This document shows positions 22,168 to 27,700 of a stretch of DNA of 64,000 nt, one piece after another. The stretch comes from Ranitomeya imitator. Lineage: Eukaryota. The notes below the pieces were generated by a model. The model did no database searches. It saw only the letters and a list, made by a program, of their open reading frames with translations, and was not told the origin of the DNA. The stretch covers positions 35,774,001-35,838,000 of the forward strand of contig NC_091283.1 of NCBI RefSeq assembly GCF_032444005.1, written 5' to 3'. How positions within the stretch are numbered: position 1 is the stretch's first letter; every line of letters begins with the position of its first letter. Position numbers and translations under genes: made by a program.

Positions 22168-25100
22168 ATGGCGCTGTGTGTGAGGCGGCTCCGCGGAGCT
22201 CCGGGGATCGGGAGTCGGTGGAAGAGCGGGATACGCAGCGCTGGTGGAGCCACGGGCAGAGTGCGGGAGAGTATGCGGGTGAGTGCAGGGGATGAGCCGT
22301 TATTGCTGCACGTCCAGTCTGCTAATGTCCAATGTGCGCAGTATAACCTCCATCATGTTATATTAACCCCTCCTCCCTGACTGTGAACCACGTGGATAAG
22401 GCATAAGCCTCGTTGCCTATAGCAACCAATCATTGTTCAAATGTTCGTTTAAAAACCGCAAACTAACAACTGATTGGTTGCCAAGAGCATAATAACGGAC
22501 TAGCAACCAATCGCAGCACAGCTTTCATTTATAGTGATACCTGGCGACCGTCCAATCGCTTCACGGCTTTCATTTATTATAGTGCTCTTGAATAATGAGA
22601 GCTGCTCTGTGATTGGATGCTTTGGTCAACAATGGCAGTTTTTGTTTTTCCTCCCGTAATGAAGGCCGTGCTGCGTCTGGTTGTGAAGCAGCAGCTGTGC
22701 TGTCACGGGACGACGGAGGAAATGTGGAATTACTGTGATAATAGGGGCCTCCCACTGCTCGGTGACGGTGTGATACCCCGTATCTCTGGTGTTTGCTCAC
22801 TTCTGCCCTCACCCGTCTTACATTCCTCTTGTTTTCTCTCAGGCTCGAGATGCCATCTTGTACCGGGACCTGCGGCCCTGTCCTCGCCTCACCACTCCTC
22901 TTAGACGACCGTCTCCGACCCCGACGGCCGCACTCTCCGCACTTGTCCGGCCCAGGGGCCCCCAGATGTGTTTACCGCCAGCGCCTGAGCAGGGCCCGGC
23001 CCCGTGGGACTTTTTACTGCAGAAGTTGCCTCCACAGCCGATACTAGGTTGTCTCCCCTGTGCCAAGCCCAGCAGCGGGCCCCACCGCCCGGAGGACGGG
23101 TGCCGGCACCTCAGCACTTCACAGCTGGACTGTTTTAGAAGCTTGTTTGAGCCTGGAGTTTGTCGGACCCCTTACCAGGCTCTAGTGTTACCCCTTCCTC
23201 CAGGACACGAAGGGTTATTAGCGTTTACACCCAGCAACAGGGTCCGCGCCAACCAGACCCCCGGCACCGACAGATCGGACATGGAGCAGCACCTGGCAGC
23301 GATGTATGAGAAACTGAGGGACGAGGTGAGTGCGCAGAGAGGGGATTAACCCCTTCCAAACGTGTGCCGATGGGCTGCGACGGCAGCCAGAGTCCTACTG
23401 AAAGCCGCCATGAAGCCCGGCCATAGACCAAGCTGCAGAAAGGGTCATCGTGTTTCCTATGTATTGGACTACTGTAAAGCAAGTGATAAAAAATATAAGA
23501 AAACAAAAATACATATATAAAAAAATCAGTCATTGTACAGGAGAGGGGGAGGAGGTGAGCTGTGACATCACCTATTGTGAATGGTGGATCCTGTGTAATC
23601 TACTGTATATAGAGGTGTTATCAGTCATTGTACAGAAGGAGGAGGTGAGCTGTGACATCACCTATTGTGAATGGTGGATCCTGTGTTATCTACTGTACAT
23701 AGAGGTGTTATCAGTCATTGTACAGGAGGAGGAGGTGAGCTGTGACATCATCTATTGTGAATGGTGGATCCTGTGTTATCTACTGTACATAGAGGTGTTA
23801 TCAGTCATTGTACTGGAGGAGGTGAGCTGTGACATCACCTATTGTGAATGGTGGATTCTGTGTTATCTACTGTATATAGAGGTGTTATCAGTCATTGTAC
23901 AGGAGGAGGAGGTGAGCTGTGACATCACCTATTGTGAATGTTGGATCCTGTGTTATCTACTGTATATAGAGGTGTTATCAGTCATTGTACAGGAGGAGGA
24001 GGTGAGCTGTGATATCATCTATTATAATTGATTCTAAAGTTATTGCACTAGGCCTGATCTTCCGACATTGATACATCGGGGAGGTCATTTGCTAATATCA
24101 TGATCATGGGAGATTATTGTCTGTGTTGAGAATGAGACTGCTGAAAAATCTTCTGTAAAGAACAGGAAATGTGGGTCTGAATTTGCAAAATTTCAATTAT
24201 TTTCTTAAGGGTATGTGCACACGTCCGGATTTTTCGCGTTTTTTTTGCGGATTTTCCCGATAAAAACGCTATAAATCCGCATAAAAAACGCTCAAATTAT
24301 GCATCCTATCATTTAGAATGCATTCCGCATTTTTTGTGCAGATGTATGCGTTTTTTTCCGCTAAAAAAACGCAATCCGCAAAAAGAATGGCCATGCTCAT
24401 TCTTTTTGCGGATTTTCTGCGGATTTCATGCATTCAGGGAAAAAAAAAAAAACGCGAGAAAAACGCGCGGAAAAAAACGCGATTTTCTGGCAGATTTCTC
24501 CGGATTTTGTCAGGAAAAAAACCTGACGTGTGCACATAGCCTAAATATACAGATTGTGATCTGAAAAAGTTTTGGTGTGTTTTTTTTTTTTTTTTTTTGT
24601 CTTTTTTTTTCTATACTTTGAGACTGGTTTGATTCTTCTCTCACTTTGGACCATTCAGCACACAAGTTTGTTTTTTCCCTTCCCCCATGACGGCACACCT
24701 GAGAGAGGGGATCCGCCCAGCCAGGACAGGAAACCCTACTGAAAATAAAAGGGCGGTACCTTTCCCTCGCTTCAGTTGGTTTTCAGAGCATGAGAGGCCC
24801 CCCTGGTTAGTACACATGGCAATCCAACACCACATCATATTAACTAAAAAAGCACCCAAAACAATAGTGCACACCGAAAAGGTGATAAAGGGGGGGAATA
24901 TACAGGTGCCGTCATGGGTTCCGGAAAAACCTGTTACCAGTAAGTAACCCTGGTGTTTTCCCTTCCCCCATGATGGCACACCTGAGAGACTTTTGTAGAA
25001 TGAAACCTTAGGGAGGGACCACCGCTTGGAGTACCCTTCTACCAAAGGTTAGGTCAGCAGAGGAGGAAAGGTCTAGCCGGTAGTGCTTGAAAAAAGTTGA

Positions 25101-27700
25101 GGGTGAGGACCAGGTAGCAGCCTTGCAAATTTGATCAATTGATACCTCAGCCTTTTCCGCCCAGGAGGTAGCCATGGCTCTGGTAGAGTGAGCCTTGATG
25201 CCTTCAGGAACCGGAGTGCCACCCGCAGAGTAGGATAAACTAATGGCCTCCCTAATCCATCTAGCAATAGTACTTTTAGCTACCCCACACCCTCTTTTGC
25301 TACCCTGAAAGGCTATGAATAGGGTTTGGTCTTTCCTCCACTGACTAGTCATAGATATGTATTGTAACATAGATCTTCTCACATCTAGCATGTGGAGCTT
25401 TTGTTCCCCTGGATTTTTGGGATTACTACAGAAAGATGGTAAGGTAATCTCTTGAGTCCTATGGAACTTTTGAACCACCTTGGGGAGATAAGCCGGGTCT
25501 GGTCTTAGAACGATCCTGTCATCAAAAACCTGAGTATAAGGAGGGGATATTGACAGGGCTTGCAAATCACTTACCCTACGTGCCGATGTTAGGGCTACTA
25601 GAAGAACTGTTTTAAGGGTAAGTAACTTAGGTGATAACTCCTGTAAAGGCTCGAAAGGGTGTTTAGTTAGAGCTTCTAAGACCAAATTTAGATCCCAAGG
25701 AGGGATTTTTGGGATAACGACCGGCCGAGATCTACTGCAAGATTTTATGAATCGTGAAACCCATCTATTTGAGGCAAGATTACAGTTATACAGGGCCCCC
25801 AAGGCTGAAACCTGAACTTTAAGGGTGCTGGTTGCTAACCCAAGATGTAATCCTGCTTGCAGAAATTCTAGGATAGGACCCACTGGAGCCACCTCCCCCA
25901 ATGGTTCACCCAGGAAGTCAAGAAATTTTTTCCATGTCCTACCATAGATTCTAGAAGTTATGGGTTTTCTGCTTTTCAACAGGGTGGAGATTAAACCTGG
26001 TGAGAATCCATGGCGACTTAGTAACGCCCTCTCAAATTCCAGGCTGCCAGATGGAAGCCCTTCACCTGAGAGTGGGTTACTGGGCCCTGGGTTAGTAGGT
26101 CCGGAATTTCTGGCAAAATCCATGGATCTGTTACCGACATCTGTCTTAGAAGGGAGAACCATGGTCTCCTTGGCCAAAATAGAGCTATGAGGATAATCCT
26201 CGCCTGATCCTCTCTGATCTTCCGGATCACAGCTGGGATCATCACTATCGGGGGGAATGCGTAGGCCAGAGAAAACTTCCAAGGTATTAGTAGGGCATCT
26301 ACTGCGAAGGGATGTTCTCTTGGATTCAAGGAGCAGAATTTTCTGACTTTTTTGTTGTGAGAATTGGCAAACAAGTCTATCAGGTGTGCCGTCATGGGGG
26401 AAGGGAAAACACCAGGGTTACTTACTGGTAACAGGTTTTTCCGGAACCCATGACGGCACCTGTATATTCCCCCCCCCTTTATCACCTTTTCGGTGTGCAC
26501 TATTGTTTTGGGTGCTTTTTTAGTTAATATGATGTGGTGTTGGATTGCCATGTGTACTAACCAGGGGGGCCTCTCATGCTCTGAAAACCAACTGAAGCGA
26601 GGGAAAGGTACCGCCCTTTTATTTTCAGTAGGATTTCCTGTCCTGGCTGGGCGGATCCCCTCTCTCAGGTGTGCCGTCATGGGTTCCGGAAAAACCTGTT
26701 ACCAGTAAGTAACCCTGGTGTTTCTGTTTTTTTTTTTTTTTTTTTTACTATAGTTGCCGAATTTCCTATGGAAGCCGGTGAATTATTCCTTATACAGGAA
26801 GGACATGGAGTTCGTCAGTAGCGCGCTGCACCTGCGCTTACGGTAAGAGCGGAGCAAACATTTTTTTTCCAAACTTCCATCATGTCCGCAATGGCCGCCA
26901 GTGATGACCTCCCCTGCCTTGTCCTCCCACAGCGGCCTGGTGAAGTACCAGCTCTTCCTGACCATCAGCCGCCTGCTGCTGCTCTGTTATTTCACCAATG
27001 CGCGGATCTCGGTGCTGAAGATGACGTCTCATCCAGAGAACAACACCATCCAGGCCCGCTGGTCGCTCACCGGCCTCCCGCTGCACACGCTCTTCTTGTA
27101 CTTCTTCCGCAGGGACAAGAGTGAACTGTACAGGTGATAATATCTCCGCTCCCCGACTGGTGCGGAGTAGTGGTAACCAGAAATGTCAGATGGGTGGGAG
27201 CAGGTCATGAGAAGCTTGACGAGGAGGTGGTCGCGGTGTTTTCAGATGGCCAGTCCGGGCCGAGCACTGGCCGCTCAGTCTGAATAATCCACACAAACCC
27301 CCCAAAAATATGATTCTTGCAACATAGTTTGTTGCACAAATGCATGCGCCGTGGTTCAGGGGATCGTTACCGATCAATTTTGTCTACATGGTCAGACTGT
27401 ATCTTTCTCGTTTTCAGGACCTACGATGCGTTTTCCACCTTCCAGCTAGCTCCGGATGGGTTAATATGTCTACATAAGGTGGAGCAGGTGAGTGCAGTCA
27501 CAGACCCAGTGGTGATGTGTGGCCCTCAGACGGTGCGATGATGGCCTCTGTACCTATGGCTCTTGCAGGTGATGCCCTCTTCCCCCATAACGGTGACCAA
27601 GAAGACTGTTTTGGCCGCCGCTCTTCTCGCTCTGGGGCTGGGAGAAGAACGACCCGCTCTAAATCTCCTCTCCAGCCCTAAAATGCCCCATGAACTGTAA
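22168..27700 (+). CDS. C6orf136: C6orf136 homolog (DUF2358-type), complete, 6 exons, 361 aa
   Basis: Exons 22168-22278, 22843-23325, 26754-26842, 26933-27133, 27418-27487 and 27569-27700, all AG/GT with consistent phases. Protein segments MEQHLAAMYEKLRDELPNFL..., HPENNTIQARWSLTGLPLH and RTYDAFSTF match human C6orf136 as I recall it. Confidence 0.93.
23527..24022. repeat. ~90-bp tandem repeat, ~5.5 units
   Basis: gtgagctgtga(c/t)atca recurs at 23555, 23645, 23735, 23822, 23912 and 24002. Confidence 0.95.
24208..24542. mobile_element. MITE (agggtatgtgcacacgtc...gacgtgtgcacatagcct)
   Basis: Terminal inverted repeats, no coding capacity. Confidence 0.75.
25008..26162 (-). CDS. DIRS tyrosine recombinase, uninterrupted (384 aa from first ATG; frame open from 26282)
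   Basis: Catalytic set present: TSARRVSD (R), LPKV (K), AHSTRA (HxxR), AATW (W) and FKHY (Y). PWDLNLVL motif is typical of vertebrate DIRS YR. Confidence 0.93.
   Translation of the reverse strand: MVLPSKTDVGNRSMDFARNSGPTNPGPSNPLSGEGLPSGSLEFERALLSRHGFSPGLISTLLKSRKPITSRIYGRTWKKFLDFLGEPLGEVAPVGPILEFLQAGLHLGLATSTLKVQVSALGALYNCNLASNRWVSRFIKSCSRSRPVVIPKIPPWDLNLVLEALTKHPFEPLQELSPKLLTLKTVLLVALTSARRVSDLQALSISPPYTQVFDDRIVLRPDPAYLPKVVQKFHRTQEITLPSFCSNPKNPGEQKLHMLDVRRSMLQYISMTSQWRKDQTLFIAFQGSKRGCGVAKSTIARWIREAISLSYSAGGTPVPEGIKAHSTRAMATSWAEKAEVSIDQICKAATWSSPSTFFKHYRLDLSSSADLTFGRRVLQAVVPP
26018..26395 (-). CDS. DIRS methyltransferase-like (MT) domain ORF, 125 aa from a junction-derived ATG (frame open from ATG 26680)
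   Basis: IDLFAN...VDAL...W...YAFPP...IILIALFWPRRPWF is the C-terminal MT domain of the DIRS pol ORF. It overlaps the YR ORF in another frame, as is usual for DIRS. Confidence 0.75.
   Translation of the reverse strand: MTAHLIDLFANSHNKKVRKFCSLNPREHPFAVDALLIPWKFSLAYAFPPIVMIPAVIRKIREDQARIILIALFWPRRPWFSLLRQMSVTDPWILPEIPDLLTQGPVTHSQVKGFHLAAWNLRGRY

What the first reader, a model, noticed from the sequence alone, without database searches (positions are those of the whole stretch)
24673..26720. Inside-out mini-DIRS: precise plus-polarity ends around an inverted core of only an intact tyrosine recombinase and an MT domain
Seen: the termini read as a normal plus-strand DIRS (lE-lITR ... ICR-rITR-rE, TTT at both flanks). 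The coding core faces the other way: an uninterrupted YR with all catalytic residues and an MT-like ORF are on the minus strand, and gag, RT and RNase H are missing. The ICR is present twice in inverted orientation, so the arms form a 309-bp inverted repeat (24684-24992 / 26373-26683) with only 3 substitutions and one homopolymer length difference by my count. The abnormal junction falls on a 10/11-nt microhomology (ctgagagactt in the ICR versus ctgatagactt at the MT start). Known: canonical DIRS1-like elements have one ICR, co-oriented with gag-pol-YR, and integrate a circle via YR at a T-rich junction. Inference: this is a young template-switch product that keeps all cis signals plus its own integrase. 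It could be the member of an undescribed semi-autonomous family, retro-mobilised in trans or moving as a Crypton-like YR DNA element.
Basis: partly seen in the sequence, partly recalled or inferred. Interest (0 to 1): 0.85.

Follow-up and report, generated by a model that had tools for sequence, protein, structure and literature searches.

The report
Rearranged defective DIRS retrotransposon copy
This is a real 2-kb remnant of a frog DIRS retrotransposon that lost gag, RT and RNase H and gained a second, inverted copy of its end-repair signal, most likely through one copying error, and nothing found here shows it has multiplied into a family.

Summary
At 24673-26720 two inverted arms (24684-24992 / 26373-26683) differ by 3 substitutions and one G-run length. 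They flank 1380 bp that encode, on the minus strand, the last 120 aa of a DIRS pol (the MT domain) and an intact tyrosine recombinase. The ends plus TTTT match both ICR copies at 83/84.

Two corrections.
- **Breakpoint.** Contigs from four public runs follow the window up to 26380 and then run on into different sequence. So the breakpoint is 26380/26381. The true microhomology is 7 of 8 nt, not 10/11; the 'ctg' comes from the ICR.
- **No family shown.** No indexed run holds the junction 31-mers, the window has no other copy, and no protein in the database carries the ITR-MT fusion.

Best reading: a one-off template-switch product of a high-copy, apparently transcribed DIRS family. An incomplete DNA strand ending at the MT start re-primed beside the ICR and copied ICR plus ITR in reverse. 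Because the arms are symmetric, the 'inside-out' polarity needs no special explanation. The copy lies in a T-run 33 nt upstream of a candidate 3' splice site of a DUF2358 host gene.

The scan also noted this stretch as s1-307519. Interest is moderate to low.

The parts
24671..24676 (.). Left flank T-run (6 T) at the integration crossover
24673..24706 (+). Left terminus: TTTT, cccttcc, the 13-nt core CCCATGACGGCAC, then acctgagaga. It is complementary to the left half of the ICR.
24707..24905 (+). Left ITR body, inverted repeat of 26460-26660
24906..24989 (+). Left-arm ICR copy. On the + strand it reads as a circle junction (right end-TTTT-left end). On the - strand it is the canonical ICR directly downstream of the YR.
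   Evidence: contigs from other runs cross 24992/24993
25008..26282 (-). Tyrosine recombinase ORF, given as the ORF extent. Likely ATG at 26162 or 26123. All catalytic residues are present.
26018..26380 (-). Pol C-terminal 'MT' domain (IDLFANSH...RGRY, then stop), complete from its start. It overlaps the YR ORF, as in canonical elements.
26373..26381 (.). Illegitimate junction. Parent-type sequence ends at 26380 and ICR sequence starts at 26380/26381. There is 7/8-nt microhomology with a retained mismatch at 26379.
26376..26459 (+). Right-arm ICR, in canonical polarity relative to the right ITR and rE, but joined abnormally to the MT start
26460..26683 (+). Right ITR
26684..26720 (+). Right extension (rE), 100% complementary to the right half of the ICR
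   Evidence: (pair I3)
26721..26723 (.). Right flank TTT

Best explanation
This is a single defective derivative of an active, high-copy DIRS1-like retrotransposon family. On the minus strand it keeps the canonical 3' part of the element: MT domain, YR, ICR, right ITR.

gag-RT-RNase H has been replaced by a second, inverted copy of ICR + ITR. The likely cause is a template switch. A growing DNA strand (the window's + strand) had copied ITR, ICR, YR and MT and stopped at the MT start (26380). Its 3' end AAGTCTAT then paired with AGAGACTT beside the ICR (24985-24992). That pairing site lay either on the strand's own 5' part or on the other parental strand. The strand then copied ICR + ITR in reverse.

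This resembles a mis-placed version of the fold-back step that the Cappello model uses to rebuild the left ITR from the right one. The ends were then set by the normal ICR-guided closure and YR crossover in a T-run. If the switch happened at a replication fork after insertion, the ends were simply already in place.

Because both arms carry the same signals, core orientation relative to the ends is arbitrary. It could also flip later by recombination between the arms.

Shown: the anatomy, the breakpoint, the existence of the parent family and the canonical YR-ICR adjacency. Inferred: the switching mechanism, its stage (before or after integration) and the single-copy status.
For: - The arms match at 305 of 309 aligned positions, and both ICR copies match the joined ends at 83/84.
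- In X1, X3, X11 and X5, contigs match the window up to exactly 26380 and then run on for 13 to 540 further letters.
- In X5 the parent-type contig has depth 492, against 9.35 for the single-copy flank.
- The junction overlap is 7/8 nt. The mismatch keeps the parent's base, as expected for a primer end.
- YR stop followed by the ICR is conserved in DIRS transcripts of other frog data sets. So the minus-strand YR to left-arm link is the original one.
- The fold-back restoration of the left LTR from the right LTR, and the requirement for the ICR, are described in PMC7192593.
- The junction words are absent from all indexed runs.
- Core pieces from other runs differ from the window by 0-9 letters per 120-1012 nt.
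Against: - A simple first-strand fold-back with closure on the same strand predicts ends co-oriented with the core. The observed opposite polarity needs closure on the other strand, a later flip, or the two-switch replication version.
- The full-length parent could not be retrieved, so what follows its left ITR is not known.
- No independent read set was shown to contain the junction, so neither its reality outside the assembly nor its copy number is proven.
- One X5 contig shows a different junction 4 nt away. This may mean recurrent events or relatives.
Confidence: 0.6

Rival explanations
1. It is a member of a multi-copy, semi-autonomous mini-DIRS family that keeps ITRs, ICR, MT and YR. It would be retro-mobilised by RT supplied in trans, or would move as DNA through its own YR.
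For: - All cis signals and an intact YR are present.
- The opposite polarity of ends and core would follow naturally from a second replication round started from the other ITR.
- DIRS-1 RT can act in trans on a truncated element (PMC7192593).
- A non-autonomous DIRS element, TOC1, is known in Chlamydomonas (PMC9940879).
- One X5 contig has a similar junction.
Against: - No run holds the junction 31-mers.
- No other copy in 64 kb.
- No ITR-MT fusion protein anywhere in the database.
- The only junction-like contig in X5 is at single-copy depth, while the parent contig is about 50 times deeper.
- ORF intactness is expected from youth alone.
- The truncated DIRS-1 construct did not complete retrotransposition.
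Confidence: 0.1
2. It arose after insertion. A canonical plus-oriented full-length DIRS sat here and was remodelled at a replication fork. The first strand switch occurred within the long ITRs and the second at the MT/ICR microhomology. The result inverted MT-YR-ICR, duplicated the ICR and deleted gag-RT-RNase H. This is a sub-variant of the best explanation that differs only in stage.
For: - It gives exactly the observed order and the observed end polarity without further assumptions (sequence logic).
- The element end appears present at this locus in X5: the flank contig starts about 55 nt before 26757.
Against: - It needs two switches in one event.
- No allele or orthologue with a canonical element was seen, though none could be searched.
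Confidence: 0.2
3. It is an assembly artefact: a wrong path through the inverted ITR repeats, or a chimeric join.
For: - No independent run was shown to hold the junction words.
- Elements flanked by inverted repeats are prone to inverted paths in graph assemblers.
Against: - The arms differ at 4 sites, so they are not a collapsed copy.
- The junction has a biologically typical microhomology and leaves both ORFs whole.
- The element is only 2 kb with unique flanks on both sides. The source appears to be a chromosome-scale assembly, with findings listed 787 Mb further along the same piece. Such assemblies are usually built from long reads, which would span a 2-kb element; I did not verify the sequencing technology.
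- Logan contigs drop rare variants, so their silence is weak evidence.
Confidence: 0.07
4. It is a YR-driven invertible segment. The recombinase gene lies between two inverted copies of its presumed site (J and ICR) and flips its own core, like Flp/FRT. This is the other first-stage note on the same stretch, s1-307519.
For: - Two 84-bp sites in inverted orientation, 82/84 identical, flank an intact YR.
- Such a flip would explain the inside-out polarity.
Against: - There is no evidence that both orientations exist. A flip creates no new 31-mers, so contig data cannot show it.
- The arrangement is explained as a by-product of the duplication.
- The specificity of DIRS YRs has not been tested experimentally (PMC7192593).
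Confidence: 0.05

Closest known systems
Canonical vertebrate DIRS1-like retrotransposons (e.g. DIRS-37_XT of Xenopus, AcDIRS2 of Anolis; PMC9210276, PMC3266345)
   Same: - ITRs, and an ICR complementary to both termini.
- A short core motif repeated in the ITRs and ICRs.
- TTT start and an A-run circular junction.
- The MT-then-YR order with overlapping ORFs.
- YR stop followed directly by the ICR.
- Insertion without a target-site duplication.
   Different: - No gag, RT or RNase H.
- The ICR is present twice, in inverted orientation.
- The coding core faces against the ends.
- Length is 2.0 kb instead of the 5.2-6.0 kb listed for annotated DIRS1-like elements.
TOC1, the non-autonomous DIRS-order element of Chlamydomonas, and the RT-less INT1 remnant (RNase H-MT-YR) in its mating-type locus (PMC9940879)
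   Same: They are DIRS derivatives lacking RT. INT1 keeps MT and YR, as this element does.
   Different: TOC1 is a multi-copy mobile family. This element is seen at one locus only and has a duplicated inverted ICR.
Crypton DNA transposons (PMC3212892)
   Same: A YR is the only enzyme with a known DNA-joining role encoded in the element.
   Different: - The YR here is that of a retrotransposon family whose other copies continue into pol sequence upstream of the MT start.
- Its best matches are frog proteins, several fused to RT or RNase H domains.
- It has DIRS ITRs and an ICR.
- No copies were found that would show DNA transposition.
5'-inverted or fold-back products of other retroelements (L1 twin priming, snap-back cDNAs); from my own knowledge, not tested here
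   Same: A truncated copy with an inverted segment joined at a microhomology, made by a polymerase changing template.
   Different: Here the inverted part is the distal terminal signal block (ICR + ITR). The product therefore regains a complete set of DIRS ends.

Membership tests
DIRS1-like retrotransposon (autonomous) | Tyrosine recombinase ORF with the catalytic R..K..HxxR..W/H..Y residues | tested here: met
DIRS1-like retrotransposon (autonomous) | Reverse transcriptase and RNase H domains | tested here: not met
   The 1380-bp core is filled by MT and YR only.
DIRS1-like retrotransposon (autonomous) | gag-like ORF1 | tested here: not met
   No such ORF. The ITR-derived ORF has no relatives.
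DIRS1-like retrotransposon (autonomous) | MT-like domain at the pol C-terminus | tested here: met
   61% identity over 120 aa to the pol C-terminus of L002; 120 database hits to this part.
DIRS1-like retrotransposon (autonomous) | Inverted terminal repeats, plus an ICR complementary to both termini, with a junction motif that matches the flanks | tested here: met
   (83/84; TTTT)
DIRS1-like retrotransposon (autonomous) | A single ICR, near the 3' end and co-oriented with the ORFs and the ends | tested here: not met
   There are two inverted ICR copies. The core is opposite to the ends.
Non-autonomous / mini DIRS family | Several copies share the same internal junction at different loci | tested here: inconclusive
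   The junction words were found in no indexed run and there is no second copy in the window. The source genome itself could not be searched.
Crypton | The YR lineage is separate from retrotransposon YRs, with no RT-bearing relatives of the same sequence | tested here: not met
   Contigs nearly identical to the core (0-2 differences over 143-345 nt) continue upstream of the MT start into different sequence. The best protein matches are frog YRs, some fused to RT or RNase H domains.

The most novel reading that the evidence does not exclude
The element is a working mini-DIRS. An MT+YR-only unit with duplicated inverted ICRs would replicate with RT borrowed from full-length relatives, starting from either ITR, or would move and flip as DNA through its own recombinase. 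The second, slightly different ITR-to-MT junction seen in run X5 would then be a sister copy.
Probability: 0.08. Interest if true: 0.75.

Novelty: new variant of a known kind. Interest (0 to 1): 0.35.

Why it matters
The replication of DIRS elements is still largely a model. The fold-back that rebuilds the left ITR and the ICR-guided closure have little direct support outside Dictyostelium.

A natural vertebrate copy whose only defect is a mis-placed strand switch, but which still acquired perfect ends in a T-run, is a small piece of evidence. It suggests that these steps tolerate, and act on, symmetric substrates.

It also places an intact recombinase between two inverted copies of its presumed site, which is a ready-made test object for DIRS YR specificity. 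As a single defective copy it has no wider consequence, unless a family is found.

Tried and rejected
- **Related frog loci.** Look-ups in dendrobatid genomes returned no DNA because the files are too large.
- **Metagenome scans.** Two scans, one with the YR protein and one with a 26-nt terminus pattern, found nothing.
- **Parent element.** It could not be recovered. The protein database holds nothing closer than 65% to the YR, and transcript contigs of related families break inside the ICR.
- **Splicing as the origin of the junction.** Rejected: there is no GT after the left side and no matching donor/acceptor pair at 24989/26380.
- **Nested insertion of one DIRS into another.** Rejected: neither part has a complete pair of ends, and the MT junction is not at a T-run.
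- **ITR-derived ORF (MTAHLREG...) as a gag N-terminus.** No Pfam or database support. Its in-frame run into MT in the right arm depends on the 9-G run and is probably chance.
- **Dating from arm divergence.** Two substitutions in 309 nt, one of them a CpG transition in the left arm. I kept this only as 'young', because gene conversion between the arms would reset it.
- **Literature.** I found no paper describing a DIRS copy with a duplicated inverted ICR.

Full report
**Anatomy**

The element spans 24673-26720 (2048 bp). On the + strand it reads as follows:
- Left terminus, 24673-24706: TTTT, cccttcc, the 13-nt core CCCATGACGGCAC, then acctgagaga.
- ITR body, 24707-24905.
- An 84-nt block, 24906-24989, equal to right end + TTTT + left end.
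- The reverse complement of a YR ORF (26282..25008).
- The reverse complement of the pol C-terminal MT domain (26380..26018).
- The reverse complement of the 84-nt block, 26376-26459. This is an ICR in canonical polarity.
- The right ITR, 26460-26683.
- The right extension, 26684-26720.

The arms 24684-24992 and 26373-26683 differ by three substitutions and a 7-versus-9 G-run. The joined ends match each ICR copy at 83/84. The 13-nt core occurs six times: four as in a canonical element, plus two from the extra ICR. This fits the short motif shared by ITRs and ICRs described in PMC3266345. The motifs occur nowhere else in the 64-kb window.

**Coding content**

The YR ORF has 233 database relatives. 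The best are 60-62% identical frog proteins, some fused to RT or RNase H domains. In an alignment with seven of them, R236, K268, H365, R368, W391 and Y401 are invariant.

The MT segment aligns from its first residue (IDLFA...) to residues 342-461 of a pol fragment of another frog's DIRS transcript. In that fragment RVT_1 and RNase H lie upstream. A related contig (L008) shows the canonical order RT, MT and YR, with MT and YR overlapping as they do here.

**Which link is abnormal**

In transcript contigs of related DIRS families, the YR stop is followed about 20 nt later by the same series seen here on the minus strand. That series is tctctcaggt, then GTGCCGTCATGG, the left ICR, AAAA, the right ICR and the core. 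Contigs from other runs also cross 24992/24993. The YR to left-arm adjacency is therefore canonical.

In contrast, contigs in all four runs laid (X1, X3, X11, X5) match the window up to exactly 26380 and then continue for 13-540 letters unlike the window. The X5 loose end reads TTCTGGTGAGCCCC. The parent family thus reads ...GSPE-IDLFAN..., and 26380/26381 is the single illegitimate junction.

The real overlap is AAGTCTAT against AGAGACTT, 7 of 8 nt. The mismatch at 26379 keeps the parent's base. The chance of 7/8 or better at a random junction is about 4e-4.

**Family or one-off**

- In X5 the parent-type contig ending at 26380 has depth 492, against 9.35 for the unique flank. The parent family is therefore high-copy. 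Near-identical core contigs occur in RNA-labelled runs as well, which suggests the family is transcribed.
- A 60-nt query in which 29 of 30 31-mers are junction-specific found no holder. Only one of four sampled words was present, and only in two other organisms.
- The protein search with the 220-aa ITR-plus-MT ORF returned only MT-part matches, with 55% coverage or less.

This argues against an abundant family. It is weak evidence against a rare one, because Logan contigs drop rare variants and the source genome could not be searched.

One X5 contig at single-copy depth joins 24708(+) to 26376(-). This is a different junction, 4 nt from the window's. It remains unexplained.

**Mechanism**

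In the Cappello model, as summarised in PMC7192593, the antisense cDNA restores its left LTR by using the right-LTR sequence as template. The ICR then guides closure of the ends. The same paper shows the ICR to be essential.

The window's + strand is the antisense strand of the core. A strand that stopped at the MT start and re-primed at the 7/8-nt match beside the ICR would copy ICR + ITR in reverse. That yields exactly the observed order and the retained mismatch.

A two-switch version at a replication fork inside an inserted canonical element gives the same product. In that version the first switch lies within the ITRs and the second at the microhomology. It also gives the observed end polarity without further assumptions. 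I cannot separate the two versions.

Because the arms are symmetric, the 'inside-out' polarity can arise in three ways: closure on either strand, homologous recombination between the arms, or YR action on the two inverted sites. It therefore carries little information about origin.

**Context**

The element lies in an intron. Its right end is 33 nt upstream of a candidate 3' splice site (..actatag|TTGCC, 26753/26754). That exon, ending at 26841, is spliced to 26932 across a 90-nt GT..AG intron in two runs. The downstream exon encodes part of a DUF2358 protein.

**Precedents**

The literature held here describes canonical DIRS structure, a non-autonomous DIRS element (TOC1) and an RT-less RNase H-MT-YR remnant in Chlamydomonas. 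I found no description of a duplicated inverted ICR.

**Verdict**

This is a real, neat but probably unique defective copy. It is a new structural variant of a known kind and of moderate to low interest, unless a genome-wide search finds more copies.

Noticed in passing
window 24190-24560: A roughly 370-bp MITE-like repeat with 41-nt imperfect terminal inverted repeats (24194-24234 / 24516-24556) and internal TTTTGCGGATTT-type repeats. Summed contig depth in the part of it that was laid (24300-24581) is about 33,000-290,000 in DNA run X5, against 9 for single-copy flank. It is therefore one of the most abundant repeats of this genome.
   Followed up: no
window 26754-26841 and 26932-27137: Two host exons on the + strand, joined across a 90-nt GT..AG intron in runs X1 and X11. 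The second exon matches Pfam DUF2358. The DIRS copy sits in the poly-T tract 33 nt upstream of the first exon's candidate 3' splice site, so it may have displaced the branch point.
   Followed up: partly
window 24708 / 26376 (run X5): One single-copy-depth contig joins the outer ITR start to the MT start, 4 nt from the window's own breakpoint. It may be a second, independent aberrant junction at the same spot.
   Followed up: partly
window 26680-26018 (-) versus 24687-24947 (+): An ATG inside the terminal core opens an ORF through the whole ITR. In the right arm (9 G) it runs in frame through the ICR into the MT domain (220 aa). In the left arm (7 G) it stops after 86 aa. The ITR part has no relatives.
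   Followed up: yes
L001:532-1611: In a related frog DIRS transcript the gag ORF matches Pfam LAP2alpha. This agrees with the published DIRS origin of the LAP2alpha domain (PMC4495291 appeared in the literature search; I did not read it).
   Followed up: no
window 26350-26409: One junction-region 31-mer is held by runs of two other organisms (G, H) that were not among the holders of the element. It is probably the conserved ITR/ICR end preceded by the same base, which would mean the DIRS termini are conserved across species.
   Followed up: no
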